Of a DNA stretch of 64,000 nucleotides, positions 1-54,213 are shown one piece after another. The stretch is taken from IMG/VR virus record IMGVR_UViG_3300047548_001236, positions 218,856 to 282,855 of that record. One strand, given 5' to 3'. How positions within the stretch are numbered: position 1 is the first letter of the stretch; each line of letters starts with the position of its first letter. The position numbers and the translations under genes were made by a program. The notes beneath the pieces were generated by a model, which had not been told where the DNA came from, made no database searches, and was given only the letters and a program-made list of their open reading frames with translations.

Positions 1-1
1 T

Positions 2-1456
2 AGGTTCCACCACTATGAACCATACGAGATAGATGATGCGATTGCTGGATACAAGAAGAGGTTGAGTGATAGCAACAATGATCCTACTGCCAGTGGGGTC
101 AGCTACCACCACACAACAAAAAATCTGACAGACATTAGCGAAAAGGCTAAGCTAAGTGACAAGCAATTCGATGCGATCCATTCTCTTCCTATTGGTAAAG
201 ATTACCTTAACCGACCAGAGGGCGTTCCACTCAGCCTGAGCAAAAACAAAAAGCTGACACATGAGCAGGTGGGTAAGTTGCTAGGCGCCCATGACGAGAA
301 GGTGCTTGATCATCACGAAGAGCAGCTTGCACAGAACCCTGTTGTGAAGGACGAACATATTGACGCATTGCTCAAATCACCGAGACTCAGCAAAGAAGCA
401 TTCCACTCGCTGGCCAACAATCCTAACTTGAAACAACATCACATCGACGCTCTTATCAAAGATCCAGAGACGCATGATAAGCTGGGTAGCAACCACGCGA
501 TCACTTTGACCAAGGATCATCAGGATCAGATAATAGATAGTGGCAAGTGGAAGGAAGGGTTTGCACATCGCAGTGACCTGCACCCTGATACCGTCGAGCA
601 TTTGCTGGGAAGTGGGTATGGAGCACACATCCATACGCACCTGGTCAACAACCCACATGTTGAGATGGATGATCGCCAGCTTCGTAGTTTGCATGCGCAG
701 CACAATAGAGGCGAGTCTGCAATTTCTGGAGCCATCTTCGATTCTCCAAAGACGTCTCCAGAGACGAGAGAGCATGTGTTCAATACTCATATGGATCATC
801 TTGAAAGAAGCGGTGGAGGTTCTAGCCCTGCTCTTGATACGATGATCCGTTCCAAGCATTTCACAAAAGACCACCTCGATCGAGTGCTGGATGTTGCTGA
901 CAAAACAGATAAACAACCAGGTGCAACGAACACAATGAGAATATACGCTTCGAGATATCTCAAGGCATCACCTGCTCAGCTTGATCGTCAGGTCAACGCT
1001 AGCAAGCAAGGCACCGCTCCAGTAGGTTATCTGCTTGACAATAAGAACCTGAAACCCGAACACTTGAAAACGTTGTTCAACGCTGCAGCTTCTAGCAAAA
1101 CGGAGTATGAAAAGGAAAAGGTGATGGAGCATCCATCCATCAACGGGGATGTTCTCCATCACGTGTTCGATAGTGGACATAGCTGGGATAGAACACGTGT
1201 TCTACACCACCCAAAAGTTCAAATGTCTCACTTCCAAAAAGCTATGGATGTGGGTCAATCCTTGCATGGCGCGATATCGTCTTCACCGAGTGCTCCGCCT
1301 TCGACTCTGAGTAAGCTGGCTGACTCGCCGTTCTCGTTCGTGCGTCAAAACATTGCGAGTCACAAGAACACACCTCAAGAAACCCTTGCTAACCTAGCAA
1401 ACGATTCAGCCGAAGAGGTGTCGTCCATTGCTAAGAAGCGTTTGAAGTTGAAATAA
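2..1456 (+). CDS. His-rich alpha-solenoid repeat protein with C-terminal LRV-type repeats; 5' end lies outside the window
   Basis: Frame is open from base 2 (RFHHYEPYEIDDAIAGYKKRLSDS...), so the TTG at 62 is not the true start. About 25-aa degenerate repeats (HPxxxxxHLxxxL); C-terminal SAPPSTLSKLADSPFSFVRQNIASHKNTPQETLANLAND is LRV-like. Confidence 0.7.
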   Translation, partial: RFHHYEPYEIDDAIAGYKKRLSDSNNDPTASGVSYHHTTKNLTDISEKAKLSDKQFDAIHSLPIGKDYLNRPEGVPLSLSKNKKLTHEQVGKLLGAHDEKVLDHHEEQLAQNPVVKDEHIDALLKSPRLSKEAFHSLANNPNLKQHHIDALIKDPETHDKLGSNHAITLTKDHQDQIIDSGKWKEGFAHRSDLHPDTVEHLLGSGYGAHIHTHLVNNPHVEMDDRQLRSLHAQHNRGESAISGAIFDSPKTSPETREHVFNTHMDHLERSGGGSSPALDTMIRSKHFTKDHLDRVLDVADKTDKQPGATNTMRIYASRYLKASPAQLDRQVNASKQGTAPVGYLLDNKNLKPEHLKTLFNAAASSKTEYEKEKVMEHPSINGDVLHHVFDSGHSWDRTRVLHHPKVQMSHFQKAMDVGQSLHGAISSSPSAPPSTLSKLADSPFSFVRQNIASHKNTPQETLANLANDSAEEVSSIAKKRLKLK

Positions 1457-1467
1457 GAGAGCCAAAC

Positions 1468-2442
1468 ATGGAATACGAACTCACATCTCAGAAGCTCGAC
1501 AACAACACCCATCTAGTGAAGAACAAGCACACGAACGAGCCAGTCGCCATACTGAAAAGAACTGGCGGCTACAAGCGAAATGAAGTCAAGTCGGAATGGC
1601 ACCCCGACTACAAGCTGTTGCACCCTGAGGTTCACGAAAACCTTCTGACGAGAAACTTCCACAAGCCACATGACAGCGTTTCTGATGCTGTTAGCAACAT
1701 CACATACATATCGCAAGATCACGCATTTGGTAAAAACTCGCGAATCGATCCTATCAAAACACGGTATGCCGGCGATTTTGATACCAAGACACCTTATGGC
1801 CAAGATACGAAAGGGCATAAGTGGCATGTGTTGGACGATGACGGGAAACACGTCGCTTCTATAACGTCATTCCACGGACCAAACCAAATTCACCGCGAGT
1901 CTCCTGTAAGTGTCGGTTGGGTCAAATCGTTCAACGATAGCGTTCCCGATAGTGTCAAAGAAGCGGCAAATTCAAAGCACGGAGGTCAGACTCTTTATGC
2001 GACGATGAACCGTATTCGTTACATGATGGACAACAAGGGTAAAGAGCCTCGCTTTGTCGGTACGCATGTCGACCCTGCGTCTAAGACTAAGATGTTCAAA
2101 ACGAATCTACCACCAGAAGAAGCGTCGAAGGCGTATGAAGAGCATCTAGCAAAGAGGCTAGGAAACGGCTACACGTTTACACGTCACGGACCCACGCTGT
2201 TTACAGCAGAGAAGCCAGCGCAAGGAAGGTACGATAGAACTTACCAACACCACGTTATAGCTATGCCTGGTCAGCTTCATCATATCGAGTCTTCGCTCCA
2301 TCACCCAGACTACGATACAACGACCAACAAGAACAAGGAAGTTGTTGAGTCGTATATGCTGAATCCTAATAAGAGACCTTACCCGTTGACGCTCGAAGAG
2401 CATCTCAAGGCACAACGTTTCCTCCTTAAAAAGGCTAGATAA
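1468..2442 (+). CDS. His-rich hypothetical protein, 324 aa
   Basis: Long ORF tightly packed between neighbours (11-nt gap upstream, abutting downstream); no recognisable motif. Confidence 0.75.
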   Translation: MEYELTSQKLDNNTHLVKNKHTNEPVAILKRTGGYKRNEVKSEWHPDYKLLHPEVHENLLTRNFHKPHDSVSDAVSNITYISQDHAFGKNSRIDPIKTRYAGDFDTKTPYGQDTKGHKWHVLDDDGKHVASITSFHGPNQIHRESPVSVGWVKSFNDSVPDSVKEAANSKHGGQTLYATMNRIRYMMDNKGKEPRFVGTHVDPASKTKMFKTNLPPEEASKAYEEHLAKRLGNGYTFTRHGPTLFTAEKPAQGRYDRTYQHHVIAMPGQLHHIESSLHHPDYDTTTNKNKEVVESYMLNPNKRPYPLTLEEHLKAQRFLLKKAR

Positions 2443-4536
2443 ATGCGCAGCTTCAAATCGTATCTGATAGAGTATATAACCGACAGCCAACGTGAACGTT
2501 ACAAAAACGTCCACATGACCGACAAAGCTCGTGCCGATACCGATGAATTTTTCGGTGTCGGTAACGACAAGGTTCACGGCGAAATCGAACACGGTGAAAA
2601 GTCCGAGATACATAAGCAACTCGAGAACCATCTCGGGCGAGAGGTATCTCATGAAGAATACAACAAGGGAACCGTGAAAGACAAACACAACCGTGATGTG
2701 AAGATCGGACGTTTGATCAAGGACAATGACCTACGTATTCAGTTTGACAAGGACCCATCTCGTCAGATTGCAAAAGCACCCACTCTGAAAACAACGACCG
2801 TTCGCGGTGTTGAGGTTGCAGGGCAGACAAACCCTGTACCCAATGCTGAACATCCTGAGGGACATTCGTGGAAGGGTTATAGCTGTAAGAACATTGAGTC
2901 AGGAATCAATAGGCGTTATCTCGAGCCAGAAATCAAGCACGGGACTGTTGTTCACTATGTACATGATCACAACGGCCAAGAAATATATCGAGCAACGCTT
3001 CACCCGCACCATAACGAACATGGTGATGTTGCATATGGCTTGGATGCTGAGTATGGTATCAAACACCCGAAGTTCACAGCTGATGCCCAGCGCGTCGCGA
3101 AGGAGCTCTCTGGTGAATATAAGCCAGGAACGTTCTGGAAGCACCCGGAAGTATACAACGACAACGGCAAGAGTAATATGTTCCACCCTGGCATATCCGA
3201 AGGGCATATTTCAGATATCTTAACACACGGTTCAACCAGTGACAAACATGATATCATGATGCACCCTGCTTTCACAAGCGATCACGTGTCCAAGGTTCTG
3301 AAATACGAACCAAATGGAGCACTGAGAGGACACGCTTTATTGAGAAGCGATCTTGTGACACCAGAACACATCACGACAGCTTTGAACGATCCCGACGACC
3401 ACGTTAAGCGTATGGCTCTACACAACGGGTCCAAAATTACAGCGGATCATGTTAAACGAGCTCTTGAGCCTGACATGCCAGCGGACATTCGCCGTCATAT
3501 GGCTAAAAACCGCCATGCAACACCTGAATTGCTTTCACAAGTTATCAAGCACGATCCGAACTCGGAAGTTGTGCAAACGGCTGTAATGAACAAGAATGCT
3601 ACCCCAGAACATATAACTCAGGCTTTACAACATCCTGACGTTTACGTGAGACAAGCGGCATTGACGCGTTCTGACCTCGTCAATGACAGCCATCTGCACA
3701 CCGCTGTCCGTGACTCCAGTCCTCGTATCACAACACATGCAGCTTTTCATCACAAAGCTAAACCAGAACATCTCGACTACATTATGGATCATGGACATAA
3801 CAACGCACTCGAAGCTATGTTCCACCGTGAAAGCAACGCAACGTCTGAACACATTGGCAAAGCTCTTCGTAGCACCGATCCAAGATTCACGACAACTATA
3901 AAAGAGTTCGCTGCATCACATCCCAACGCATCTTCGGAAAATATCATGGATGCGTTGAAACTAAACAACCCACGCATCACCTATGATGTGATCGATAATC
4001 ACGATAATCTCAGCAAAGAGCATATGGATCACATAGTGAAGCATACGCCTGATGATGACGATATGATATCCGCAATATCTCGTCACCCATCGTTGCGTGC
4101 CGAGCACATTACGCATCTTCTCGATAGACCGGGCATATCAAAGAACATATTCGCAAGTCGTATATACAAACAGCTAGCCAACCACCGGAATCTCGCTCCG
4201 GAACATATGGAGAGACTGGCCAAGCACGACAACTGGAATGTTCGAAATATCATTGCCAATCGTCACGATGCTCCTGCTCATGTTCTCTCACATATCGTCA
4301 GACACGATCCAGAAGAAGCAAACAGATATGATGCTATCATGAACGACAACACTCATCCGGACGATCTGGAGCATGCTGTCAAACATGATGAAAGCGTATT
4401 CAATAAGGAAGCTGCACTGCGCAACTTCAATACGCCGGTACATGCAATCAAGCACGTTTTGGATACATATAAGACAGGCGATCTGAGAAAACAAGCCATT
4501 AGCTCTCTGCGTCAAAGAGGAATACAAGCCGAATGA
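2443..4536 (+). CDS. Putative capsid-targeted internal virion protein: conserved N-domain plus HEAT/LRV-like repeats (paralogue A)
   Basis: N-terminus MRSFKSYLIE resembles the T4 capsid-targeting leader. First ~245 aa closely match the next ORF, followed by ~24-aa repeats such as ATPEHITQAL. Confidence 0.7.
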   Translation: MRSFKSYLIEYITDSQRERYKNVHMTDKARADTDEFFGVGNDKVHGEIEHGEKSEIHKQLENHLGREVSHEEYNKGTVKDKHNRDVKIGRLIKDNDLRIQFDKDPSRQIAKAPTLKTTTVRGVEVAGQTNPVPNAEHPEGHSWKGYSCKNIESGINRRYLEPEIKHGTVVHYVHDHNGQEIYRATLHPHHNEHGDVAYGLDAEYGIKHPKFTADAQRVAKELSGEYKPGTFWKHPEVYNDNGKSNMFHPGISEGHISDILTHGSTSDKHDIMMHPAFTSDHVSKVLKYEPNGALRGHALLRSDLVTPEHITTALNDPDDHVKRMALHNGSKITADHVKRALEPDMPADIRRHMAKNRHATPELLSQVIKHDPNSEVVQTAVMNKNATPEHITQALQHPDVYVRQAALTRSDLVNDSHLHTAVRDSSPRITTHAAFHHKAKPEHLDYIMDHGHNNALEAMFHRESNATSEHIGKALRSTDPRFTTTIKEFAASHPNASSENIMDALKLNNPRITYDVIDNHDNLSKEHMDHIVKHTPDDDDMISAISRHPSLRAEHITHLLDRPGISKNIFASRIYKQLANHRNLAPEHMERLAKHDNWNVRNIIANRHDAPAHVLSHIVRHDPEEANRYDAIMNDNTHPDDLEHAVKHDESVFNKEAALRNFNTPVHAIKHVLDTYKTGDLRKQAISSLRQRGIQAE

Positions 4537-6464
4537 TAAAGTTCAAATCGTTTTTGTTGGAATATCTAACAGACAAGCAAAGGGAACGGTATAAAGACGT
4601 TCGCATGACCGATAAGGCTCGCGCTGACACGGACCATTTCTTTGGAGCTGGGAATGACAAGATACACGGCGAGATCGAGCATGACGACAAGTCAGAAATT
4701 CATCACCAGCTCGAAGCCCATCTAGGCCAGCCTATTTCTCACGAGGATTACAAAAAAGGAACGACTCTCGATCGTCACGGTCGAGAAGTGAAGATTGGCC
4801 GTCTGATTAAGGATAACGACCTTCGCAATCAGTTTGACCAAGATCCATCACGTAAGATAGCCAAAACGTCAACGCTCAAAACCACAACGGTACGTGGTAC
4901 GGAAGTAGCTGGCCAGACAAATCCTGAGCCAAACGCAGAGCATCCAAACGGCCACTCGTGGCACGACATAAGCTGTAAAAACGTTGAGAATGGCATAAAC
5001 AAGCATTATCTTGATAAAGAGATCCAACACGGCACCGTTGTCCATTTTGTTCACGACCACAACGGGCAGGAAATCTACCGAGCAACATTACACCCACATC
5101 ACAACGATGAGGGTCATACCATCTACTCCGTCGATGCGGAATATGGTATAAAACACCCCAACTTCACACAGGATGCTCATCGTGTCGCGAGCCAGCTTTC
5201 TGGCGAGTATAAAAGGGGAACATTTGTCAAAAACCGCAATGTGTATAACGACAATGGAATGAGGTATGCTCTTCACCCAGCAGCACCTGGAGCTGAGGTT
5301 GATAAAGAAACCCACGAAGAACTCGCAAAACCGTACGAAAAGCAGAGTGCTGAGAAGCTGAGAGTGCTGCTAACACATCCAAATATTTCAGGCGAAACGT
5401 TGTCACACGTTCTACACACTACTCAGGAGACGCCTGCAGACGTATGGGGTCTTGCAGCTAAACACCCAAATCTGAAAGGTGAACACCTAGAAAAAGCGTT
5501 GAACAGCACACATAGTCACACAGCGACTTCGGCTCTAAAGAATCCTAATGTTACAGCCGAACATCTGCATAAAGTGTTGGACGCTCCAGATACCAATCGT
5601 AACTGGGCTCAAAAACGAGCTGTGTTCGAATCCCCTGCTGTCAATTCGAGCCACATTGAGAAAGCTCTCAAGACCGATCCTAGCGATGATTTGTTTCATG
5701 CTGCAGCACAACATCCTAAGACAACATCTGCGCAGTTGAACGTTGTCGCTCAGCATTACCCATACATTGCTCTCCAACACAGAAACGTCAAGCCATCCAA
5801 CATCGATAAATGGTTGGATAGTGACGATGGTCGTCTACGTCAAGGAGCTGCTCTGCATAAAGCGGCTACTGATGCTAACCTCACAAAAGCTCTGTCACAG
5901 GATCCTGAAACGCGATCAGGCACTGTTTGGGCTGCTCTAGGCAACCGTAACATAAAACCACATCACATCGAACCGTTTCTGAATCACAGTAACAGAGAAC
6001 TCCGCATTGCGGCTGCTGAAAGTCCTGGAATCTCTCCTGAGCAGATTGATAAAGTTCTTGACCACGAGAAAGATCGGCATGTTTTAAGTACATTGATCCA
6101 CAGAACCAATACCAAGGTTACAGATGCACATCTACGCAAGGTTCTGAACGGTGATTATCCGATGAGAGTTAAAGAAAAGGTAGCAGAGCATCCGAACATA
6201 TCTTCTGATACGATCAACAAGGCGTTGGATTTTGCTCATCAAAACGATAATGGGAAGATGGCGCTCGACGCTCTTAGTCACGACCACGTAACCTCAGACA
6301 ACCTACACCACGCGTTGAAACTCGACAATCCTCGCATCGAGAGCGACGTCTTGTGGCATAATCAGGCTACACCAGAACACTGGGAATACGTTGCCAAGCA
6401 CAGTAAAAGCCCAGGTAACGTTGCTGTTGCCGAGCGGTTCCTGGCAAACGGTAGAAGAGGATAA
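4533..6464 (+). CDS. Putative capsid-targeted internal virion protein: conserved N-domain plus HEAT/LRV-like repeats (paralogue B)
   Basis: N-terminus MIKFKSFLLE; ATGA overlap with paralogue A; shared N-domain, divergent repeat region. Confidence 0.7.
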   Translation: MIKFKSFLLEYLTDKQRERYKDVRMTDKARADTDHFFGAGNDKIHGEIEHDDKSEIHHQLEAHLGQPISHEDYKKGTTLDRHGREVKIGRLIKDNDLRNQFDQDPSRKIAKTSTLKTTTVRGTEVAGQTNPEPNAEHPNGHSWHDISCKNVENGINKHYLDKEIQHGTVVHFVHDHNGQEIYRATLHPHHNDEGHTIYSVDAEYGIKHPNFTQDAHRVASQLSGEYKRGTFVKNRNVYNDNGMRYALHPAAPGAEVDKETHEELAKPYEKQSAEKLRVLLTHPNISGETLSHVLHTTQETPADVWGLAAKHPNLKGEHLEKALNSTHSHTATSALKNPNVTAEHLHKVLDAPDTNRNWAQKRAVFESPAVNSSHIEKALKTDPSDDLFHAAAQHPKTTSAQLNVVAQHYPYIALQHRNVKPSNIDKWLDSDDGRLRQGAALHKAATDANLTKALSQDPETRSGTVWAALGNRNIKPHHIEPFLNHSNRELRIAAAESPGISPEQIDKVLDHEKDRHVLSTLIHRTNTKVTDAHLRKVLNGDYPMRVKEKVAEHPNISSDTINKALDFAHQNDNGKMALDALSHDHVTSDNLHHALKLDNPRIESDVLWHNQATPEHWEYVAKHSKSPGNVAVAERFLANGRRG

Positions 6465-36941: not shown

Positions 36942-37292
36942 TTATAGATCAGAAGAGTGGTGTATTACTTGCCACACATCTCTCTGATCACCCTTAGTGA
37001 CGATTGTAAGTTGGTGTTGTTCAGAACCGTTATATTTGGAGTAGACGTGTTCGGTGACAACACCAGGACGATATGTTTTTGTCTGATATCGATAACCGGA
37101 AGCCATCACCCACTCATGCAGATGTTCATGCTTCATCTTGATGGACATACGATCATTGATATAGCCGACACCACCATCCTCAGTCATAACCTTGTGAAAA
37201 TCTTTCAACTCTTCATCAAGGTTGAGAATACCCGAATCTTGTTCGGGCATGTATATCACACTTTCGCTGAGAATCTGCTTGAACGTTTTCAT
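36942..37292 (-). CDS. Putative capsid-targeted internal head protein
   Basis: Starts MKTFKQILSE; own late-type promoter CATAAATA 26 nt upstream. Confidence 0.65.
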   Translation of the reverse strand: MKTFKQILSESVIYMPEQDSGILNLDEELKDFHKVMTEDGGVGYINDRMSIKMKHEHLHEWVMASGYRYQTKTYRPGVVTEHVYSKYNGSEQHQLTIVTKGDQRDVWQVIHHSSDL

Positions 37293-44457: not shown

Positions 44458-44631
44458 TTACTTTGCGACGTCGTCAGATTCTTCTTCGGGATGGTATTCG
44501 TCGTCCTCTTTGGCTTTCATTTTTGCTTCCAATGCAAGACCTATGCGAGAACGTAGTTCTTCTTTCAAGGTTGCTTCGAAACCAAGAGCGTTTTTATCCA
44601 TCGCTTCTTGTACAAGTGTTTTAACCGACAT
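44458..44631 (-). CDS. Small acidic prohead-core-like protein, 57 aa, paralogue of 44853-45293 (not in ORF track)
   Basis: MSVKTLVQEAMDKNALGFEATLKEELRSRIGLALEAKMKAKEDDEYHPEEESDDVAK; GAGGA SD. Confidence 0.7.
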   Translation of the reverse strand: MSVKTLVQEAMDKNALGFEATLKEELRSRIGLALEAKMKAKEDDEYHPEEESDDVAK

Positions 44632-44845
44632 TTTTATATCCTCTGTGAGTTAGGTTAGTTGAAAGGTTTTCCATCGAGTGGTTATACGTTGCAATTTCTC
44701 TATTGCTGTCATCGTACACATGCGTGACAATGCCGTTCTTCACTCTTTTGTAACGCCCGTAGTTATCGTTGAAGTCGTCTCCCGACATATTATACAGGTT
44801 TTTGTGCTTTGCTTCTATTATAAACGCTTTAAACGACTTCAACAT
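44621..44845 (-). CDS. Putative capsid-targeted small internal protein
   Basis: N-terminus MLKSFKAFIIE. Confidence 0.6.
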   Translation of the reverse strand: MLKSFKAFIIEAKHKNLYNMSGDDFNDNYGRYKRVKNGIVTHVYDDSNREIATYNHSMENLSTNLTHRGYKNVG

Positions 44846-44852
44846 GATACGA

Positions 44853-45293
44853 TCATTCCTTTGTTGCAGCTACCTTAGCTGACGAGCTTTTACCTTCCAT
44901 CTTTCTGACCTTTTCATCGGCCATTTTGACGCCAGCGTATCTATTATCCACTTTCTTGGTTGGTAGTTTGCGATGCTTTGATGCGTCAGATGCTTTAATA
45001 GAATAATTTGCTGCTAGCTTTGCAGAAATTTCATCGAGCTGAGCAGACTCAGATCTCATCTTAGCGTTTTCAGCGTCCTTTTGCTCGTCTTCGTCGTCAT
45101 CCTTGTCTTCTGGCTCAAGTTCGACGTCGTCTTCTGGTGTTTCTTCCTCGTCGTCCTCTTCATCCTCAGGTAGGCCATTCATCTTGGCTTCGAGAGCGAG
45201 AGACATGCGACGACGGAGTTCTTCTTTAAGAGTCTTTTCAAACCCCAAAGCATCCTTTTCCATTGCTTCTTGAATTAGTGTCTTAACTGACAT
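44853..45293 (-). CDS. Acidic prohead-core-like (gp67-like architecture) protein
   Basis: MSVKTLIQEAMEKDALGFEKTLKEELRRRMSLALE then a D/E-rich tract and LDE site. Confidence 0.6.
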   Translation of the reverse strand: MSVKTLIQEAMEKDALGFEKTLKEELRRRMSLALEAKMNGLPEDEEDDEEETPEDDVELEPEDKDDDEDEQKDAENAKMRSESAQLDEISAKLAANYSIKASDASKHRKLPTKKVDNRYAGVKMADEKVRKMEGKSSSAKVAATKE

Positions 45294-45311: not shown

Positions 45312-46181
45312 TTATTTTACAATTTGGCTGATTTGTGTTTCGTCTAGCTTGCCTGTTATAGGATATTTATTTGCCCTTTGCCAAGAACGAACAGCAGCTT
45401 CTGTTGTAACGCCATATATGCCATCGACAGAGATTCTTAGAGACTGCTGTACTCTACGTACTAGATCACCTTTTGCTCCTCTCTGCAATGATCTCGCTTG
45501 AGGAGCAGCAGCTGGAGTCGTGACTGCATCTGTTATTTGTGGATTGACAGGAGTCGCGGAAGTTAGACCGACGAAAGCGTTCTTGTTTCTCGAATAGCGA
45601 GAAACACGATCGTTCATACCATTATCGCCGCCATTAACAGCTCGGGACATTCCTCGGATATCGTCAGCATCCGCAAAACGATTGAGGTTGTTCGTTCTCC
45701 AGAACCATAAAGCCGATTCCATCGCGCCTTTTTTCGTTTCCATATATGCGGCAGCTTCCTCTGCAGTCATGTCGACTGACTTGCCAAACTTTTCGTAATT
45801 CCATCTACCAGTCAATTGAATCAAACCACGGCCTCTAAATCTCCAGCCATCACCAGGCTGTGTGTTACCGAGCTTGTTGGTTCTATTTGCGTCGTCGTAA
45901 ACCCTATTTGCGATCATCTCAGGCTTGCGAGCGAACTGCTTTGCAGTTTCCTTTGTAAAGTACCTTCCGAAAGTTTTCAAAAGAGCGGTTTCGCTATAAT
46001 TGAGATTTTCTTGAAGTACCTTAAAATCACCTGATTCGTGTCCTGCTTGAGCCATAAAACCAGCTATTCGGTTAGCCGTCGTCAGATCGTATTTTGGAAA
46101 CAACTCCTCTGCTATGTCGTACCACTCCTTAGCAGATTTGTTGGTGGGTATCATTTTCTCGAATTGTTCTAATGTTAGCAT
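45312..46181 (-). CDS. Endolysin: GH19 chitinase-like catalytic domain plus C-terminal peptidoglycan-binding domain
   Basis: RIAGFMAQAGHES, ENLNYS, DGWRFRGRGLIQLTGRWNY, SALWFW, VNGG; C-terminal LQRGAKGDLV..VQ..L...DGIYG..TEAAVRSWQ. Confidence 0.92.
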   Translation of the reverse strand: MLTLEQFEKMIPTNKSAKEWYDIAEELFPKYDLTTANRIAGFMAQAGHESGDFKVLQENLNYSETALLKTFGRYFTKETAKQFARKPEMIANRVYDDANRTNKLGNTQPGDGWRFRGRGLIQLTGRWNYEKFGKSVDMTAEEAAAYMETKKGAMESALWFWRTNNLNRFADADDIRGMSRAVNGGDNGMNDRVSRYSRNKNAFVGLTSATPVNPQITDAVTTPAAAPQARSLQRGAKGDLVRRVQQSLRISVDGIYGVTTEAAVRSWQRANKYPITGKLDETQISQIVK

Positions 46182-46901: not shown

Positions 46902-47765
46902 TTATTCCTTAGCCCTCTTACCGGCAAGATAGTTCTTGATCACTTCGTTGTGCTTTTCAGAATCCTCAGTAGGTCGACCAACAGATCTCACTGACACAAG
47001 TCTCTTGCTTTGTTCGTCGGCACGAGAGGACATACCTCTCTGATATACGTGATGAAGGGTGCTTTTACCTGTCTTAGTATTCTCAACACGAATGGCAACA
47101 GTATCGCCGTAATCGTCCTTATCGTGTACAGGTACACCGATTCTACCCATTTTACGAGTGTGAGCGACAACGTGAGATGGCGGTCCTTCTCTCATTGAAG
47201 TTTTCTGCCCTGTTTTCAGGGTGTAGCTACCGTACTGTTGTGGCTGCCAAAGACGACTCTCGTTCATATCGACACTCTCGTGATACATTCTACCTTGAAG
47301 TCTTGCAGCTCTCTTTTCGCGCCACGCTTCATGATCGTCAACAGCATCTTCTTTAGATGCTATCTGCTCGAATTCAGGATCGTTTCTTGTGTATATCATC
47401 GAGTGCTCATCACCACTCATTGGCTTACCCGACGCATCAATTCTACGCACTTCGATTTCATCGGGTGTACGTCTTGTCACGGCAACATCTGAGGAGCCGT
47501 CCCAGTCAACAGTATGTACCGCTTCACTAACGCACTTACCACCTTTGTATACAGCAACGTCGTTTTTGCTGGGATAGAGAGATACATAGTGCTTATCGCC
47601 TACTTTATTGACATGGTAGCTGTTGCTCATATTCTCAGGCTTTGATGAGAATGACATAGCTGCTTGTCTTGCTGATTTTTCGTCCGTGGCTTCGAGAAGC
47701 GCGCCCTCTCGTAGAGAAGACAAATGCATTCTATCTAAGCCGAACCATCCGTTTGATGTCCACAT
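46902..47765 (-). CDS. Putative internal head protein with MWTSN leader and multiple xxE processing sites
   Basis: MWTSNGWFG...SLRE, ALLE-A, CVSE-A, DMNE-S. Confidence 0.55.
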   Translation of the reverse strand: MWTSNGWFGLDRMHLSSLREGALLEATDEKSARQAAMSFSSKPENMSNSYHVNKVGDKHYVSLYPSKNDVAVYKGGKCVSEAVHTVDWDGSSDVAVTRRTPDEIEVRRIDASGKPMSGDEHSMIYTRNDPEFEQIASKEDAVDDHEAWREKRAARLQGRMYHESVDMNESRLWQPQQYGSYTLKTGQKTSMREGPPSHVVAHTRKMGRIGVPVHDKDDYGDTVAIRVENTKTGKSTLHHVYQRGMSSRADEQSKRLVSVRSVGRPTEDSEKHNEVIKNYLAGKRAKE

Positions 47766-47780
47766 CTATTTACTTCCTCT

Positions 47781-48155
47781 TTAATCTGATGCTTCAATTG
47801 CGCGACTTGTATTGAAAGCCTTCTTAGAGCTTTCTTCTGCTTGCTTTATGGCTTCACTAGCTGCTGGGTGCATATGCTTGCTACGGTCGCCCATTTGCTG
47901 AAATGCATACATGTGGTGTGCAGCTTCGTCTTGAGCTTTTGCGGCATCGTCGTGTTCTCTTGCGGCGATTTCATTGAACCGACCACCCATAGCTCTATGA
48001 CGTGCAGCCATATCACGGTGTAATTGACCCATGCGTTCATGATTGATCTCATGCTCGCCCCAGTTAACGTCACCGCCACCGAGTTTGAATTCAGCTTCGT
48101 CAATACTGTTAAATTGTTCTCTACTGAAACCAAACCACTTGTTTGATGTCCACAT
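47781..48155 (-). CDS. Putative internal head protein with MWTSN leader
   Basis: MWTSNKWFG...SIDE-A; His/Ala-rich helical body. Confidence 0.55.
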   Translation of the reverse strand: MWTSNKWFGFSREQFNSIDEAEFKLGGGDVNWGEHEINHERMGQLHRDMAARHRAMGGRFNEIAAREHDDAAKAQDEAAHHMYAFQQMGDRSKHMHPAASEAIKQAEESSKKAFNTSRAIEASD

Positions 48156-49309: not shown

Positions 49310-49852
49310 TCACCAGAAAAATTTACCACCACCTGTTAGTCCAACCGATTTAGCGAAGTAAGGAAGTCTACAAGACCAATATGCGGCGGACGTCTTATCT
49401 GTCTGATCTGAACATTTATGCCGCGACGCAAAGTTTTTACGTGCCTCTGGATCGTTGATCTTTGCTGTCAACCCTGTTGTATCCCCAAACGTTACCTTCT
49501 TAATATTGCCTGTTGAAGGATCTTTGACGTACACGTAGAATTTCTTTGGTCCACCTCTACGGGGCTTGTTTAACGGAACCTTTTCTTCTTCACCCTCCAT
49601 CAAAGGTATATCGAGAGGAACCGCCCTGTCTTCGTAAAGTGCATACTCGCCAATATCTGATTCAAGTAATTCTTTCTCAAACCAGTCTTTTGTTTCATAC
49701 AAACCAACATCGTAAAGATAGCGAGCCTCGGTAAACAACGCATTGCTCATTTCTGAATGAGGCCTAAACACGTTTTCCGTGAATGGAATCTTTTTCGTCA
49801 AATGATATTCAATTGCACGCTCTAGCGTATGTTCTTTGAGGCTTCTCAACAT
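49310..49852 (-). CDS. Conserved T4-like protein with KKFYVYV...ARKNFASRHKC...AAYWSC domain
   Basis: Motif recalled from T4-like and other phage hypotheticals; lies in the head-protein cluster. Confidence 0.6.
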   Translation of the reverse strand: MLRSLKEHTLERAIEYHLTKKIPFTENVFRPHSEMSNALFTEARYLYDVGLYETKDWFEKELLESDIGEYALYEDRAVPLDIPLMEGEEEKVPLNKPRRGGPKKFYVYVKDPSTGNIKKVTFGDTTGLTAKINDPEARKNFASRHKCSDQTDKTSAAYWSCRLPYFAKSVGLTGGGKFFW

Positions 49853-50382
49853 TACGACTTCTTCCCTTTGTTACCGTAGGCTCCGCCTTCGTACCATGCA
49901 CACCAACCATTAGGGCTGATAGTTCCAGATACAGCGGTACACTTATTTGGTTCTCTCCACATTGTGCAATTGACACAGCGTTGACCGTTCTTTGGCTTGT
50001 CTTGATACTTAGCCTCAGCTTTTGATGCCTTTTTCTCTTCCGCGACTACCCTTGCTACAAATGGAAACATTGGCTGTAAATGAGCATATTCGTGTCCGAC
50101 ATATTCTATGTCGTCCGCTACAGGGTTCATTTCTTCTGCTGGCAACTCTTCGGATTGATCACCGCCGTTAGCCTTCATGTATGTGCATACTGAGACAAGG
50201 TAATCGGACGCGAGCGTCACTTTGCTTTCACCCCATCTTTCCATTGTTGCACCGGAGTCCAACATTGATATAATCTCTTGAGCTGCATTGACTGCCACTT
50301 GCAACTCTCTTTTAGACATGTCGTCTTGCTCTACTTTCGAGTCGCAAGCAACTTCATTCAGAACCTGCTTAAATGTCTTCAT
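49852..50382 (-). CDS. Capsid-targeted protein with C-terminal HiPIP (high-potential 4Fe-4S) domain
   Basis: N-terminus MKTFKQVLNE; C-terminus KASKAEAKYQDKPKNGQRCVNC-X8-C-X12-C with ISPNGWC; no Tat signal. Confidence 0.78.
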   Translation of the reverse strand: MKTFKQVLNEVACDSKVEQDDMSKRELQVAVNAAQEIISMLDSGATMERWGESKVTLASDYLVSVCTYMKANGGDQSEELPAEEMNPVADDIEYVGHEYAHLQPMFPFVARVVAEEKKASKAEAKYQDKPKNGQRCVNCTMWREPNKCTAVSGTISPNGWCAWYEGGAYGNKGKKS

Positions 50383-50400
50383 TTGGAATTCTCCTTAAGA

Positions 50401-52092
50401 TCACGATTTATCTTCGATGTCGAGCGTCTTAGGATATCCCTTCTCGCCAGGGCGAAGCCTGCGAAGACCTTTTTCACGACGCTTCCTGATGTTGTACCAG
50501 AGTCCTTTGGGTTTATGCTTTTCCTCGACTACTTGTCCAGGCGTCTCTCTCTTGTATATATCTGTCAAACTGTCTGTGCCCCACTCTCTTTGGTCAGGAA
50601 TGCTTTCTTCTGGATCTAGAGACTCGGTGACGTCAAATGTGTTGAGATATGCCTTATGGCCTTTTGTCAGTCTGTATCTATTGTACAGCTTTTCAAGCTC
50701 TTTAGCTTTTTCAGGGTCAAGATTGTATTTACTCGTGACGGATCCCGCATCACCATCTATATCCGGCGTTGCTTCATAATCTTTGAGTGCTGCAAGCATG
50801 TTCTTTCTTTCAAGTTCACGCTTGATAATTGTCTGGATGGGATCGAGATCGTCCGCTTCATTCATTCTGTCACGAATATCAGCAAACCGTTTTGAAGCTC
50901 TCTTGTTGACATCGGCATGTCTTGCATTCGTCATCATTCTGTGATGTCTGACTGCGTCCACCTTCTTTTCACTTGCGATGACGGAACGCACTCTATCTGT
51001 ATTAGACGTCTCGAGAGCTTCGATCAGCTGATTTAGATCAGTAAGAACCTCAACACTCTCGAAAACAGCATCTGTGTAATTTTTGAAGGCCTCGTTAACA
51101 TGACCTCTGTGTCCTGTAGCCGATGCTGATAGACTAACATGGTGGGAGTGTGATCTGCTTAGACGTTCAGTTTCGACTTTACGAACGACGGGGAGCAGTC
51201 TCTTAGCAATTCGCTCGATCACTGCAGGTGGGATATTCATCAGACGAGCGTCAAGAGCGTTCTTTTCAACCACGGAAAGTTCTGCGTAATCCTTGTTACG
51301 CAGAATACGCGAGCGGATGATTTCAAGCGCTCTTTTACGGGCTCTTTCTCTAAGTTTTTCAGGGGATGCTCTGCGCTCTGCAGCTCTTTCACGTGCGATT
51401 TCAATTCGCTTCGCGTAGCGACGCATCGTCTGCGCCTTCTTAATCCGCTCTGAATACGGAATAGGACGTATCTTTTCTGTGAGGTATCCCTCAGACAAAC
51501 CGTCTAATTGCACCACGACAGCTTCAAATATATCTCTCGCTGATGGACGTAGCGGCATTGCCAACGATTGCTTGAACGAAGTGAAATCACCGCGAATTGC
51601 GTGTTCTGCGATTACATCGTATGACCCAGGATCGCTATATGGAACGATGTCTATTGATTCGAAACGCAGCTCATCACGGTGCATAGCTACTACGTTGGAA
51701 ACGTCATACGCTTCTTCTTGCATGCATACAATCACGACGCTGTTGTATTCGTCTTCGCAAACCTTTAGTGCTTCAAGTATGGTAGGAACAGCACTTGGAT
51801 ACACAATGTTTCCAAAAACGCTTTGGGACATACCAATCCGCTGTTGCTCATCAAGATACCCCTCAGAGACGTCACGGTTTGAAACAAACACATATGTATC
51901 TGCCTCGTACAGCTTTGCATACTTTTTCAGGGTTTCAACCAGACGTTGATCAGCGATAGAGGGAGGGGAATAGTCACCCATCGTCAACATCGCCTTGCTT
52001 TTCTTGTCTCTTTCGAGCGTAGGATTTACCTCGACATATTTTGATGGGCTGAACTTTTTTAGGACAACCTTTTGGATTTTCTTCTCGGTCAT
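50401..52092 (-). CDS. Large putative virion protein with degenerate cytidylyltransferase-like N-domain
   Basis: TMGDYSPPSIAD in place of GRFNPPTIGH; PTILEAL; IRGDFTSFKQSL; basic RMRR...ASPEKLRERA helix domain; many xxE sites; own late promoter. Confidence 0.6.
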   Translation of the reverse strand: MTEKKIQKVVLKKFSPSKYVEVNPTLERDKKSKAMLTMGDYSPPSIADQRLVETLKKYAKLYEADTYVFVSNRDVSEGYLDEQQRIGMSQSVFGNIVYPSAVPTILEALKVCEDEYNSVVIVCMQEEAYDVSNVVAMHRDELRFESIDIVPYSDPGSYDVIAEHAIRGDFTSFKQSLAMPLRPSARDIFEAVVVQLDGLSEGYLTEKIRPIPYSERIKKAQTMRRYAKRIEIARERAAERRASPEKLRERARKRALEIIRSRILRNKDYAELSVVEKNALDARLMNIPPAVIERIAKRLLPVVRKVETERLSRSHSHHVSLSASATGHRGHVNEAFKNYTDAVFESVEVLTDLNQLIEALETSNTDRVRSVIASEKKVDAVRHHRMMTNARHADVNKRASKRFADIRDRMNEADDLDPIQTIIKRELERKNMLAALKDYEATPDIDGDAGSVTSKYNLDPEKAKELEKLYNRYRLTKGHKAYLNTFDVTESLDPEESIPDQREWGTDSLTDIYKRETPGQVVEEKHKPKGLWYNIRKRREKGLRRLRPGEKGYPKTLDIEDKS

Positions 52093-52129
52093 GAGAACAC
52101 CTTTCACTGGATTTGAGATCTGTTTACAG

Positions 52130-52137
52130 TATTTATA
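52130..52137 (-). promoter_or_regulatory. T4-type late promoter TATAAATA for the head-protein/lysis run
   Basis: Exact consensus in the intergenic gap. Confidence 0.75.
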
Positions 52138-52140: not shown

Positions 52141-52827
52141 TCAAGACTTTAGGTGTTTGTGAAAGGATGATATTGTAGAACCGTAAAAGGTATCTGCTTT
52201 ATTCCATATTGTCGATTGCCTTATCCATCCGATAGCTGGGGTCGGATCAACAACAGCAAGAGGAACGCGACTTCTTCTTTTCTTCATGAAAAAACGGTTG
52301 TCTATTGGACCACCACCTCCACCAGTCCTCAACTCGTCTAACAGAGATTGTGCTGTTTTAGGAGTCAGTGCGTACGCGTGAGCGCCGTTGTGATGATCGA
52401 TATCTATTATCTTTCTGGGAGGTCCGGCAGCTATGTGATCATACTTAGATGGGTCGTTAAGTTTATACCCCAACACAACAATTTTACCATCGGGAATGTT
52501 CATATTGATAGGATGTAACATCAAAGCATCATGTTCCAAAACAATAGCGCATTGCTGTGTTTCAGCAATGCGCTTCCATATTAATGCATGTGACACGGAA
52601 CAACAGGCTGCTTTGTCAATCTTGTCGTCGTTTATTCGGTGATCCATACTTCCCTGTAGGATTTCTAAACCCGTCGATGTCCACGCATTGTAACTTGTCA
52701 TGTTTTCTACGCCATCAAAGAACTCGTACTGAATGCCTACGCTTTCACATGATCTTGCGCACGTGTCAGCATATTCCCGTGACAGTGGCGACGTAATGCG
52801 AAGGATGTACGCCTTTTCTGGCCTCAT
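52141..52827 (-). CDS. Glycosyltransferase family 25 (paralogue 1)
   Basis: KAYIL, FFDG, AACCSVSHALIW, IVLEHDA, GAHAYAL. Confidence 0.8.
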   Translation of the reverse strand: MRPEKAYILRITSPLSREYADTCARSCESVGIQYEFFDGVENMTSYNAWTSTGLEILQGSMDHRINDDKIDKAACCSVSHALIWKRIAETQQCAIVLEHDALMLHPINMNIPDGKIVVLGYKLNDPSKYDHIAAGPPRKIIDIDHHNGAHAYALTPKTAQSLLDELRTGGGGGPIDNRFFMKKRRSRVPLAVVDPTPAIGWIRQSTIWNKADTFYGSTISSFHKHLKS

Positions 52828-52831
52828 CGAA

Positions 52832-53521
52832 TTACCTATAGTTGTTGTTGAAAGATTCGATGAACGGGTAGTTTAACGTTGACGATTCTTTCCATATTGT
52901 CGATTTTCTGATCCAACCAATTGCTGGAGTTGGGTCGGCAATTGAGAGAGGAACCTTTGTCCGTCTCATTTTCAAGAAAAAGCAATTGTCAACAGGAGTA
53001 TTAACTCCAATAGTATTTAGCTCGTTCAACATTATTGACGCGGTATTCCACGTGAGTGCATAAGCGTGCGCTCCTTCATGTCCATCGATACCTATTAGTT
53101 TGCGAGGCGGACCAGCCTTGACGTGGTCATAACGGTTCGGATCCTGTAGTTTATAACCGAGTGCGACAATCATGTTATCAGGAATATGAACCGTAACTGG
53201 GTGAAGCATGATTGCATCATGCTCTAACACGATGGCAACTTCCTTTCGTGTGGCTATTTTGTGCCACACCATTGCATGGCTGACTGTTGCACATGCAGCC
53301 TTATCGACTTTCCCCGATTTGTAGACGCCAAGCATCTTGACAGGAAAATGGCACATCATCCATGCATCATATGCTGTTTGATTCTCGATTCCGTCAAAGA
53401 ATTCGTATGGAAGACCAATCTTTTCGCATGATTTTACAGCCTCTGATGCATATTGCTGTGACAGTGGATCAGATATTCGAATAATGTATGCTTTTTCGGG
53501 GTACATAATATGAACGCTCAC
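52832..53521 (-). CDS. Glycosyltransferase family 25 (paralogue 2)
   Basis: KAYII, FFDG, ACATVSHAMVW, IVLEHDA, GAHAYAL; visibly similar to paralogue 1. Confidence 0.8.
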   Translation of the reverse strand: MSVHIMYPEKAYIIRISDPLSQQYASEAVKSCEKIGLPYEFFDGIENQTAYDAWMMCHFPVKMLGVYKSGKVDKAACATVSHAMVWHKIATRKEVAIVLEHDAIMLHPVTVHIPDNMIVALGYKLQDPNRYDHVKAGPPRKLIGIDGHEGAHAYALTWNTASIMLNELNTIGVNTPVDNCFFLKMRRTKVPLSIADPTPAIGWIRKSTIWKESSTLNYPFIESFNNNYR

Positions 53522-54213
53522 AGAGTTGTTGTTGATTTCAAGTTTTGAACTTGAGTATAGTAGGTTTTACTCACGGCCAAAAAATTACATAATTGTTGAC
53601 ACATAATTGCATCGTTTGGCCACAGACCGTATTTATAGCAGAGTTCAATCAGATGCTTTGCAGCAAACGGTTTGATGATGTATGCGGAATTGCCAGGCAG
53701 ACCTTGGGGAACCTCCTTACTAGCAAGCATTGGAGGACTCATCAGCTCATCTTTACTGTTCTGTACCATGTCGTGGTACGTCCTAAAAGCAAATGTTGCA
53801 TGCATTGGACTATTGATACCTATTACACCATATCTTGTTTCAAGCAGCGGTTCTGGATCTAGCTTATGCACAAACATTGCGTCATGTTCTAATACGAGGA
53901 TTGGCTCTTGTGTTTGCATGCATTTTTCCCACAATAGAAAATGACTCAGAGAACAAGCGACTCTTCTTTTAGGATCTCTACCACCGTAAGCGGTCTTTCT
54001 CATCTCGGTCCATGGATCTAACACAGAACCGACATCTGGATAATTCCATATCAGCTTTTTAGCCTTCATCAATCCGTCTACGTCAGGTGGCGTTACAGCT
54101 TGAAACCTTTCAACAGTAAACGCGTTACCAACACCTTTTGACGATGATAAAAGAGCATGGAACCCTTTCTCAGATATCTCATTACCGTTCATTACTATTG
54201 CATAAGCCTTCAT
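53518..54213 (-). CDS. Glycosyltransferase family 25 (paralogue 3)
   Basis: RFQAV, ACSLSHFLLW, LVLEHDA, GNSAYII, PNDA. Confidence 0.8.
   Translation of the reverse strand: MKAYAIVMNGNEISEKGFHALLSSSKGVGNAFTVERFQAVTPPDVDGLMKAKKLIWNYPDVGSVLDPWTEMRKTAYGGRDPKRRVACSLSHFLLWEKCMQTQEPILVLEHDAMFVHKLDPEPLLETRYGVIGINSPMHATFAFRTYHDMVQNSKDELMSPPMLASKEVPQGLPGNSAYIIKPFAAKHLIELCYKYGLWPNDAIMCQQLCNFLAVSKTYYTQVQNLKSTTTL

What the first reader, a model, noticed from the sequence alone, without database searches (positions are those of the whole stretch)
49852..50382. HiPIP [4Fe-4S] domain fused to a capsid-targeted protein
Seen: residues ~117-166 (nt 49885-50034) KASKAEAKYQDKPKNGQRCVNCTMWREPNKCTAVSGTISPNGWCAWY have the HiPIP pattern (YQ..P, C-x2-C-x8-C-x12-C, I.P.GWC..Y), like the short alphaproteobacterial HiPIPs. 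The protein starts with the capsid leader MKTFKQVLNE instead of a Tat signal, and a possible cleavage site (VVAEE) precedes the domain. Known: HiPIPs are Tat-exported periplasmic electron carriers. Inference: a redox-active Fe-S protein packaged in the virion, which might protect DNA from oxidation, sense redox state, or be delivered to the periplasm during ejection. I know of no described case.
Basis: partly seen in the sequence, partly recalled or inferred. Interest (0 to 1): 0.78.

Follow-up and report, generated by a model that had tools for sequence, protein, structure and literature searches.

The report
Iron-sulfur protein packaged in phage heads
A freshwater T4-like phage encodes a miniature iron-sulfur electron-carrier domain (HiPIP) carrying the phage's own capsid-entry tag and protease cut sites, and the same domain is attached to capsid-interior proteins in many other phages, which points to an undescribed iron-sulfur component of virus particles.

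Summary
ORF 49852-50382 (-) encodes 176 aa. Residues 116-176 are a PioC-type mini-HiPIP:
- It passes Pfam PF01355 above the gathering score.
- It matches PioC at E = 1e-11.
- It has the same C-x2-C-x8-C-x12-C ligand spacing and aromatic shield.
- A pLDDT-83 model matches only HiPIPs.

Residues 1-10 (MKTFKQVLNE) match T4's capsid targeting sequence (MKTYQEFIAE). Thirteen ORFs in this 283-kb genome carry the motif (0.26 expected), and the genome encodes a gp21-type prohead protease.

The protein is not a one-off. Metagenomic phages and the isolate Synechococcus phage S-SRM01 encode leader+HiPIP minimal proteins of 64-78 aa. In multi-domain relatives the HiPIP is bracketed by [LIVM]-x-E protease-type sites on both sides (43 of 48). 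In non-T4 phages the same domain is fused to prohead protease, MuF and portal-MuF proteins.

Best reading: an accessory, protease-released, basic, oxygen-tolerant [4Fe-4S] internal head protein that is probably ejected with the DNA. Packaging, metal content and function are all inferred, not shown. I found no paper describing it. UniProt auto-annotates the S-SRM01 domain only. I rate it a new variant of known kinds.

The parts
49852..50382 (-). Whole gene: 176-aa leader + N-domain + mini-HiPIP protein (stop codon 49852-49854)
50353..50382 (-). Residues 1-10, MKTFKQVLNE: T4-type capsid-targeting/propeptide leader ending in an L-N-E protease-type site
   Evidence: T4 ipII/ipIII MKTYQEFIAE and ipI MKTFKEF read from NC_000866. 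13 such N-termini in the genome against 0.26 expected. Conserved at protein level with synonymous codon variation.
50038..50352 (-). Residues 11-115: acidic N-domain (pI 4.3), a helical hairpin (helices 21-43 and 52-72) followed by an acidic low-complexity linker. It occurs without the HiPIP in the closest relatives.
   Evidence: the homologous hairpin lies at the C-terminus of S-WAM2 AOV61865.1
50038..50046 (-). V113-A114-E115: candidate prohead-protease site at the N-domain/HiPIP junction. The linker FVARVVAEE aligns with the leaders of short-form HiPIPs, so it is a leader remnant.
49855..50037 (-). Residues 116-176: PioC-type mini-HiPIP domain with a basic Gly/Lys tail (pI 9.5, 6.7 kDa). 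Predicted [4Fe-4S] ligands are Cys136 (49975-49977), Cys139 (49966-49968), Cys148 (49939-49941) and Cys161 (49900-49902).
50391..50396 (-). AAGGAG ribosome-binding site 8 nt upstream of the ATG. There are only 18 nt to the preceding gene, so the two are probably co-transcribed.
52130..52137 (-). TATAAATA, a T4-type late-promoter motif, 38 nt upstream of ATG 52092 of the gene preceding the HiPIP gene
50401..52107 (-). Upstream operon partner, 563/568 aa, cytidylyltransferase-like N-terminal part (phrog_3041, phrog_23027). Conserved neighbour of the HiPIP slot.
49310..49852 (-). Downstream overlapping gene, 180 aa (phrog_7595). Its C-terminal domain is fused to the HiPIP in P0020.
36942..37292 (-). 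Another leader-bearing ORF (MKTFKQILSE, 116 aa): a member of the genome's leader family
44621..44845 (-). Another leader-bearing ORF (MLKSFKAFIIE, 74 aa)
2443..6464 (+). Two of at least six tandem paralogous leader-bearing large proteins (MRSFKSYLIE, 697 aa; MIKFKSFLLE, 643 aa). The array continues upstream of the window behind a late-promoter motif.

Best explanation
The gene encodes a precursor of two internal head proteins of a freshwater T4-like phage. It is made late in the host cytoplasm, where the C-terminal 61 residues fold around a host-assembled [4Fe-4S] cluster, as cellular HiPIPs do before Tat export. The 10-residue N-terminal leader takes the precursor into the scaffolding core of the prohead. 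The gp21-type prohead protease then cuts after Glu10 and probably after Glu115. This releases an acidic helical N-domain and a free, basic (pI 9.5), 6.7-kDa PioC-type mini-HiPIP, which stays among the packaged DNA and is ejected with it at the next infection. The HiPIP is a mobile, accessory cargo cassette (protease site, HiPIP, basic tail, protease site) that different phages load into capsids in three ways: by a T4-type leader, by fusion to MuF or portal-MuF, or by fusion to the prohead protease. Shown here: homology, fold, ligand set, leader family, protease gene, site conservation and fusion partners. Inferred: cluster occupancy, packaging, cleavage and ejection. Least certain is the role. 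My preferred guess is a DNA-associated, oxygen-stable one-electron donor or redox effector that works in the virion or immediately after ejection, not in host energy metabolism.
For: HiPIP identity: PF01355 is above its gathering score. PioC 6xyv matches at E = 1.1e-11 over chain residues 3-53 of 54, with all four Cys aligned. The four Cys are invariant, and Tyr, Pro, Val, two Gly and Trp are >=90% conserved, in 136 domains. The ligand spacing and the Trp(Cys4-1)/Tyr(Cys4+3) shield are as described for PioC (PMC7462912). The AF2 domain model has pLDDT 83.4, and 18 of its 19 PDB matches are HiPIPs. Leader: it resembles T4 IPII/IPIII/IPI at the positions that control targeting (4, 7) and processing (8, 10) (PMC9026906). 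There are 13 such N-termini against 0.26 expected, with protein-level conservation. Peptidase_S77 is present in the genome. Dialect match: in the 330-kb phage G001 the HiPIP carries that genome's 8-residue leader (4 ORFs against 0.16 expected). Cassette: 81 of 90 phage HiPIPs have a [LIVM]-x-E site <=26 aa before Cys1. 43 of 48 multi-domain forms have one 11-17 aa after Cys4, in front of about 16 unrelated downstream domains, against a background of 0.25. The junction site is conserved in 9 of 9 long forms and no site lies inside the HiPIP core. Company: HiPIP genes lie in arrays of leader-bearing genes, including a leader-tagged ADP-ribosyltransferase that parallels T4 Alt. Independent capsid links: ChaB-HiPIP-Peptidase_S78, HiPIP-MuF, and portal-MuF-HiPIP inside a terminase/portal/protease/capsid module, plus BFVD hits to prohead-protease fusions. 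Timing: a late-promoter motif heads the operon. Cytoplasmic cofactor loading is normal for HiPIPs.
Against: No virion proteomics, metal analysis or expression data exist for any member; the S-SRM01 paper has none. The junction site has Val, not Leu/Ile, at P3, and the low count of [LIVM]-x-E sites in the protein is not significant (P = 0.33). The capsid targeting sequence is experimentally defined only in T4. This phage's protease is nearest to those of T4-like cyanophages (~53% identity); I did not compare it with T4 gp21. The late-promoter support is modest: 3 of 14 leader genes have the motif directly upstream. The closest syntenic relatives lack the HiPIP, so it is dispensable. HiPIP surface residues are unusually conserved, unlike the hypervariable T4 internal proteins, so an arms-race effector role is doubtful. 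AF2 cannot show cofactor binding. In a reducing cytoplasm a HiPIP would stay reduced, so a redox role after ejection is not obvious.
Confidence: 0.65

Rival explanations
1. The protein is packaged as proposed, but the cluster (or whatever metal is bound) is purely structural. The mini-HiPIP would be a compact, protease-resistant, basic DNA-binding or charge-neutralising internal protein like T4 IPII/IPIII, with no electron-transfer role.
For: Basic pI of 9.5 and a conserved Gly/Lys tail, GGAYGKRGKK. No protease-type sites inside the core. The PioC fold is driven by the cluster and has almost no secondary structure. A HiPIP would be redox-inert in a reducing cytoplasm (established HiPIP chemistry).
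Against: The aromatic shield that sets the high potential and oxygen stability is strictly kept. Cheaper Zn ribbons would serve a purely structural role. The domain is dispensable in close relatives, which is odd for a general DNA-condensing protein.
Confidence: 0.18
2. The protein is not packaged. It is an auxiliary cytoplasmic electron carrier used during infection, like cyanophage ferredoxin or plastocyanin genes, and the N-terminal similarity to the capsid targeting sequence serves another purpose or none.
For: Phages of aquatic hosts often carry electron-carrier genes (general knowledge). Leaderless 55-70-aa forms also exist in the database. The neighbours are enzymes: cytidylyltransferase-like protein and glycosyltransferases.
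Against: The HiPIP redox couple (+50 to +500 mV) has no known cytoplasmic partner. The known host of the one isolate is a Synechococcus. As far as I know cyanobacteria do not use HiPIPs; this was not tested here. This reading does not explain the leader dialect match, the protease-type sites on both flanks, or the fusions to prohead protease, MuF and portal.
Confidence: 0.1
3. The protein is a prohead-core (scaffold) component only. It is targeted into the prohead and processed, but is expelled or degraded at maturation, so it is neither in mature virions nor ejected. The Fe-S domain would serve assembly, for example by sensing redox or iron state before DNA packaging.
For: T4 core proteins are processed and partly leave the head. 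One HiPIP fusion partner is the prohead protease itself, which generally does not remain intact.
Against: The core has no internal protease-type sites. T4 internal proteins and even peptides of similar or smaller size stay in the head (T4 knowledge; ~1000 internal protein molecules). The C-terminal position on portal-MuF is where delivered cargo domains sit in MuF proteins (my own knowledge).
Confidence: 0.07

Closest known systems
PioC, the 54-residue HiPIP of Rhodopseudomonas palustris TIE-1 (PDB 6xyv), and PioC-like mini-HiPIPs of bacteria
   Same: ~45% identity over the whole domain. Identical ligand spacing (Cys22/25/34/47 against Cys136/139/148/161). Same Tyr-Gln motif, and Trp before and Tyr three residues after the last Cys. 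Same fold: TM 0.79, rmsd 1.9 A.
   Different: PioC is made with a Tat signal and works in the periplasm between PioA and the reaction centre. The phage domain has no Tat signal. It carries a capsid-targeting-type leader or its remnant, has an added basic Gly/Lys tail, and is flanked by protease-type sites.
T4 internal proteins IPI, IPII and IPIII with their capsid targeting sequence
   Same: A ~10-residue N-terminal leader (MKTYQEFIAE / MKTFKEF against MKTFKQVLNE) ending in [LI]-x-E. A gp21-type protease in the genome. Small, nonessential, variable cargo genes, several per genome.
   Different: T4 internal proteins have no cofactor and are hypervariable, whereas the HiPIP is a cofactor-binding domain of cellular origin and is highly conserved across distant phages. 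Here two cargo modules are joined in one precursor with an internal site.
Head-delivered cargo on MuF / portal-MuF proteins, and T4 Alt (a packaged ADP-ribosyltransferase)
   Same: Enzymatic or effector domains ride into the capsid on a head-protein carrier or leader. HiPIP occupies the C-terminal cargo position of a portal-MuF protein, and sits next to a leader-tagged ART-PolyVal gene.
   Different: The cargo here is an electron-transfer domain, not a toxin or modifying enzyme.
[quoted passage not shown]
   Same: A virus-encoded Fe-S protein of unknown function (listed in PMC13251827). That it is abundant in virions is my own recollection of Villalta et al. 2023, which I did not check here.
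   Different: Unrelated sequence and cluster types ([2Fe-2S] and linear [3Fe-4S]), eukaryotic giant viruses, and no protease-processed leader.

Membership tests
HiPIP (Pfam PF01355; PioC-type mini-HiPIP) | Scores above the curated family threshold | tested here: met
   25.6 bits against a gathering score of 22; 27.2 bits in the genome scan
HiPIP (Pfam PF01355; PioC-type mini-HiPIP) | Four cysteine ligands in HiPIP register (PioC: C-x2-C-x8-C-x12-C) | tested here: met
   C136/139/148/161 align with PioC Cys22/25/34/47. They are invariant in 136 domains.
HiPIP (Pfam PF01355; PioC-type mini-HiPIP) | Aromatic shield of the cluster: N-terminal Tyr, Trp at Cys4-1, aromatic at Cys4+2/+3 | tested here: met
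   Y126, W160, W163 and Y164. Tyr and Trp are >=90% conserved. The criterion is stated in PMC7462912.
HiPIP (Pfam PF01355; PioC-type mini-HiPIP) | HiPIP fold | tested here: met
   The domain model has pLDDT 83.4. 18 of 19 PDB matches are HiPIPs; PioC TM 0.79, 1isu rmsd 1.1 A.
HiPIP (Pfam PF01355; PioC-type mini-HiPIP) | Binds a [4Fe-4S] cluster cycling 3+/2+ at positive potential | not testable with these tools
   Needs UV-vis, EPR and voltammetry on the expressed domain
HiPIP (Pfam PF01355; PioC-type mini-HiPIP) | Tat signal peptide and periplasmic location (typical of the cellular family, not of the fold) | tested here: not met
   No twin-arginine or hydrophobic signal; a leader is present instead. 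Cellular relatives in the same search do have Tat signals.
T4-type capsid-targeted internal head proteins | ~10-residue N-terminal leader with aromatic at position 4, hydrophobic at 7, Leu/Ile at 8 and Glu at 10 | tested here: met
   MKTFKQVLNE against T4 MKTYQEFIAE / MKTFKEF. The roles of these positions come from PMC9026906.
T4-type capsid-targeted internal head proteins | gp21-type (Peptidase_S77) prohead protease in the same genome | tested here: met
   128 bits at G000 172969-173415
T4-type capsid-targeted internal head proteins | Leader shared by a set of otherwise unrelated genes of the phage | tested here: met
   13 ORFs against 0.26 expected; 0 of 3158 internal Met; synonymous codon variation
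T4-type capsid-targeted internal head proteins | Expressed with the head genes (late) | tested here: inconclusive
   TATAAATA heads the operon one gene upstream, but only 3 of 14 leader genes have the motif directly upstream. No transcript data.
T4-type capsid-targeted internal head proteins | Found in purified virions with the leader removed | not testable with these tools
   No proteomics for any carrier; the S-SRM01 paper has none

The most novel reading that the evidence does not exclude
Tailed phages of several unrelated lineages (T4-like, HK97-like with MuF/portal, S78-protease types) deliberately load an oxygen-stable [4Fe-4S] HiPIP into their capsids as a functional redox component. 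It could act as a sacrificial electron donor that quenches oxidative or photo-oxidative damage to the packaged genome through DNA-mediated charge transfer, or as a redox-active effector delivered to the cell envelope or cytoplasm at ejection. At T4-like copy numbers (tens to hundreds per head) it would also put hundreds to more than a thousand iron atoms into each virion, a capsid-interior iron pool that current views of viral iron in aquatic systems do not consider.
Probability: 0.3. Interest if true: 0.9.

Novelty: new variant of a known kind. Interest (0 to 1): 0.74.

Why it matters
HiPIPs are known only as Tat-exported periplasmic electron carriers of bacteria. No cofactor-bearing electron-transfer protein has been described among phage internal or ejected head proteins. 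If confirmed, this would add a redox or iron-sulfur dimension to virion biology, bearing on particle stability in sunlit oxic water, the first seconds of infection, or both.

It would also give a sequence-defined, easily assayed marker (colour, EPR, iron content) for studying internal-protein packaging and ejection. It would supply a concrete molecular source of capsid-bound iron for the debate on virus-associated iron in aquatic systems (the 'Ferrojan Horse' hypothesis, which so far considers tail fibres; bioRxiv 10.1101/674382). An isolate, Synechococcus phage S-SRM01, makes all of this directly testable.

The bracketing of the domain by protease-type sites also suggests that T4-like phages process polyprotein-like precursors of several internal cargo modules.

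Tried and rejected
- Full-length AF2 with the 20-sequence alignment gave pLDDT 49 and was unusable except for two N-domain helices. The domain was re-predicted with 136 sequences.
- PHROGs gave no family for the protein.
- Depletion of [LIVM]-x-E sites in the protein as a whole is not significant (P = 0.33). Only position and conservation carry weight.
- A maximum-likelihood tree of 136 domains (56 columns) is largely unresolved, so no claim is made about one or several acquisitions or about a donor lineage.
- The suspected link between the HiPIP-containing 1100-1570-aa proteins and the window's upstream 568-aa gene is weak (E = 0.003 over 75 aa) and is not used.
- Whether the HiPIP-less close relatives carry a HiPIP elsewhere could not be tested, because their contigs are not held.
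- No near-identical phage record exists. Only one isolate (S-SRM01) among 50,697 records carries the domain.
- Literature searches for HiPIP with bacteriophage, virion, cyanophage or auxiliary metabolic genes found nothing relevant. The S-SRM01 paper contains no proteomics and does not mention iron.
- A Tat-exported periplasmic role was rejected, because there is no signal peptide.
- A chance Cys-rich motif or Zn ribbon was rejected on whole-domain homology and fold.

Full report
**What is there.** The minus-strand ORF 49852-50382 encodes 176 aa, with an AAGGAG site 8 nt before the ATG. The window is the last 64 kb of a 282,855-bp IMG/VR virus record that CheckV rates 100% complete. The same DNA occurs in freshwater metagenomes. 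The genome carries a gp21-type prohead protease (Peptidase_S77, 128 bits), whose nearest isolate relatives are T4-like cyanophages of the Kyanoviridae at about 53% identity. No near-identical phage record exists.

**The C-terminal domain is a HiPIP.**
- Pfam PF01355 is passed (25.6 bits against a gathering score of 22, profile positions 12-65 of 66), and it is the only HiPIP in the genome.
- The best solved relative is PioC, the 54-residue HiPIP of Rhodopseudomonas palustris TIE-1 (E = 1.1e-11, chain residues 3-53), followed by other HiPIPs.
- PioC's ligands are Cys22/25/34/47. It has a Trp before, and a Tyr three residues after, the last Cys, which shield the cluster (PMC7462912). The phage domain has the same spacing (Cys136/139/148/161) with W160, W163 and Y164.
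- In an alignment of 136 domains the four Cys are invariant, and Tyr, Pro, Val, two Gly and Trp are at least 90% conserved.
- An AlphaFold model built on that alignment reaches pLDDT 83.4, above 90 through the core. Eighteen of its 19 PDB matches are HiPIPs, led by PioC (TM 0.79, 1.9 A) and the R. tenuis protein (1.1 A).
- Cluster binding itself cannot be tested here.
- There is no Tat signal, whereas cellular relatives found in the same search have one.

**The N-terminus is a T4-type capsid-targeting leader.**
- T4's own genes, read from NC_000866, begin MKTYQEFIAE (ipII, ipIII) and MKTFKEF (ipI). This protein begins MKTFKQVLNE.
- In T4 IPIII, residues 4 and 7 govern targeting and residues 8 and 10 govern cleavage by gp21. 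The ten residues suffice to package foreign proteins (PMC9026906; PMC3012670; PMC7697877).
- The motif M-x2-[FY]-x2-[FYIVLM]-[LI]-x-E starts 13 ORFs in this genome. Composition predicts 0.26, and none of 3158 internal Met positions match. A fourteenth ORF has a one-residue insertion.
- The leaders are conserved as peptides, not as DNA. Phe is TTC or TTT in an 8:5 split, position 8 uses eight different codons, and mean nucleotide identity is 0.53.

**The protein is two cargo modules in one precursor.**
- Only two [LIVM]-x-E sites exist in the 176 residues: LNE at residue 10 and VAE at residue 115. The second lies exactly at the domain junction and is conserved in all nine long-form homologues.
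- The linker FVARVVAEE aligns with the leaders of short-form HiPIPs, so it looks like a leader remnant.
- Cutting at both sites would give an acidic helical N-domain (pI 4.3; helices 21-43 and 52-72) and a basic 6.7-kDa HiPIP (pI 9.5).
- The closest syntenic relatives have the same gene order, but their protein ends at the junction without a HiPIP. The HiPIP is therefore an accessory add-on.

**The family.**
- Database searches show a widespread phage family. The profile search gave 2333 hits at E <= 1e-3, and the top ~35 representatives are of the phage type.
- The commonest form is minimal: leader plus HiPIP, 64-78 aa. One example is the 67-aa protein of the isolate Synechococcus phage S-SRM01 (MKSFQEFLFE...). 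GenBank annotates it as hypothetical, while UniProt auto-annotates it as HiPIP-domain-containing.
- Other forms place leader+HiPIP in front of unrelated domains, including LysM-GH19 peptidoglycan hydrolases and the domain encoded by this window's downstream gene (E = 2e-15).
- Across 90 distinct phage-type proteins, 81 have a [LIVM]-x-E site within 26 residues before Cys1.
- Of 48 proteins with at least 45 residues after Cys4, 43 have such a site 11-17 residues after Cys4. It falls directly after the basic tail (GKRGKK-IDE, -LAE, -VNE, -VAE, -IEE...) and in front of about 16 different downstream sequences. The background is 0.25 per 20-residue window. The HiPIP is thus a cassette bracketed by protease-type sites.
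- In a second, 330-kb phage with its own Peptidase_S77, the HiPIP carries an 8-residue leader (MKIEDLFE). That type is enriched in that genome (4 ORFs against 0.16 expected) and absent from this one. The domain wears the leader type of its resident phage.
- HiPIP genes lie in arrays of leader-bearing genes, one of them a leader-tagged ART-PolyVal ADP-ribosyltransferase, which recalls T4's packaged Alt.

**Independent links to the capsid interior.** Among more distant members of the same profile family are three fusions to head proteins:
- ChaB-HiPIP-Peptidase_S78, a Caudovirus prohead protease;
- HiPIP-MuF;
- a portal-MuF protein with a C-terminal HiPIP. This one is encoded between a terminase gene and the prohead protease and HK97-type capsid genes.

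The viral structure library also returns HiPIP-fold domains in proteins named as prohead proteases. These are three different routes into a capsid for one domain.

**Timing.** A TATAAATA motif lies 38 nt upstream of the preceding gene's ATG, and that gene is separated from the HiPIP gene by only 18 nt. The motif is enriched in the genome (46 against 16.9 expected). It directly precedes 3 of the 14 leader genes and heads operons containing seven more. This is supportive but not decisive.

**Mechanism, and what is inferred.**
- Shown: homology, fold, ligand set, leader family, protease gene, conserved flanking sites, fusion partners, synteny and accessory status.
- Inferred: cytoplasmic cluster insertion (normal for HiPIPs before export), leader-mediated entry into the prohead core, cleavage after Glu10 and Glu115, retention among the DNA, and ejection.
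- The role is the weakest step. Against an arms-race effector stands the unusually high conservation of the domain, including surface positions. Against a metabolic role stand the missing Tat signal and the cyanobacterial host of S-SRM01.
- HiPIPs are, from established knowledge, among the few oxygen-stable Fe-S proteins. That suits long residence in a virion in oxic water. The basic tail suggests DNA contact.
- I therefore favour a DNA-associated one-electron donor or redox effector. A purely structural, DNA-binding role is the main alternative.

**Known or new.** HiPIPs and capsid-targeting leaders are each well known, but I found no paper that combines them. The only prior trace is UniProt's automatic domain label. 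I rate the finding a new variant of known kinds, with a testable and potentially general implication: an iron-sulfur protein inside phage heads.

**Limits.** No experimental data exist for any member. The domain tree is unresolved. The junction site has Val at P3. Only one isolate carries the gene.

Noticed in passing
window 1-6464 (+), continuing upstream to genome 213304: A tandem array of at least six paralogous large proteins (475-734 aa). Each has the capsid-type leader followed by a conserved YLTD-x-QR-x-RY...MT-x-KAR-x-DTD-x-FFG block. One has weak HEAT-repeat hits. The array starts behind a TATAAATA motif. They are candidates for a large family of packaged or ejected proteins.
   Followed up: partly
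window 45312-46181 (-): A 289-aa protein with Glyco_hydro_19 and PG_binding_1 domains (endolysin-like). In other phages a GH19 domain, sometimes with LysM, is fused directly behind leader+HiPIP (P0066, P0069, P0076). This raises the possibility of a head-delivered peptidoglycan hydrolase.
   Followed up: partly
window 49310-49852 (-): The downstream overlapping gene (180 aa, phrog_7595, unknown function) ends in a PLNKP...KKF-VYV...FGD...RH-C...YWSC domain. In P0020 and its cluster this domain is fused C-terminally to the HiPIP (E = 2e-15), a Rosetta-stone hint of a shared function or a shared destination.
   Followed up: partly
window 46902-47765 and 47781-48155 (-): Two adjacent ORFs (287 and 124 aa) both begin MWTSN(G/K)WFG and have no Pfam family. 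They share another conserved N-terminal tag of unknown meaning.
   Followed up: no
window 44458-44631 and 44853-45293 (-): Two ORFs with nearly identical N-termini (MSVKTL[VI]QEAM[DE]K[ND]ALGFE-x-TLKEE) flank the leader-bearing 74-aa ORF at 44621-44845. This is a local duplication in what looks like a cargo-gene region.
   Followed up: no
window 52141-54213 (-): Three tandem paralogous ~225-231-aa genes. Their counterparts in the syntenic relatives L038 and L040 hit Glyco_transf_25. They are conserved upstream of the cytidylyltransferase-like gene and the HiPIP slot, and may be a DNA or surface glycosylation module.
   Followed up: partly
L002 3620-4159 (Synechococcus phage S-WAM2, AOV61865.1): A 179-aa cyanophage protein starts MKTFKQLREE and ends with a copy of the helical hairpin that forms this protein's N-domain (37% identity over 51 aa). 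The N-domain is therefore itself a mobile module of leader-bearing proteins in isolated cyanophages.
   Followed up: partly
L012 1-1575: In one viral contig a cytidylyltransferase ORF (HxGH motif) reads straight through into ...EKSFKEYLTE + HiPIP. A glutamate codon stands where sister contigs (L017, L018) have the start Met, so this is either a natural fusion or an assembly variant.
   Followed up: no
P0094, P0167, P0184/P0115; BFVD hits: The mini-HiPIP is also fused to an inorganic pyrophosphatase (InPase), to NUDIX+DUF2213, to ParB-like nuclease domains and, by name only in BFVD, to zeta-toxin-domain, HAD-like and helicase proteins of uncultured phages. The range of partners is much wider than explored here.
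   Followed up: partly
L020 2790-7787: Three consecutive genes (397 aa, the 124-aa HiPIP protein, 1148 aa) all start with the 8-residue leader type (MRLLELFE, MRLHDLFE, MRINEISE). This cargo-gene array is analogous to T4's internal-protein loci but uses a different leader type.
   Followed up: partly
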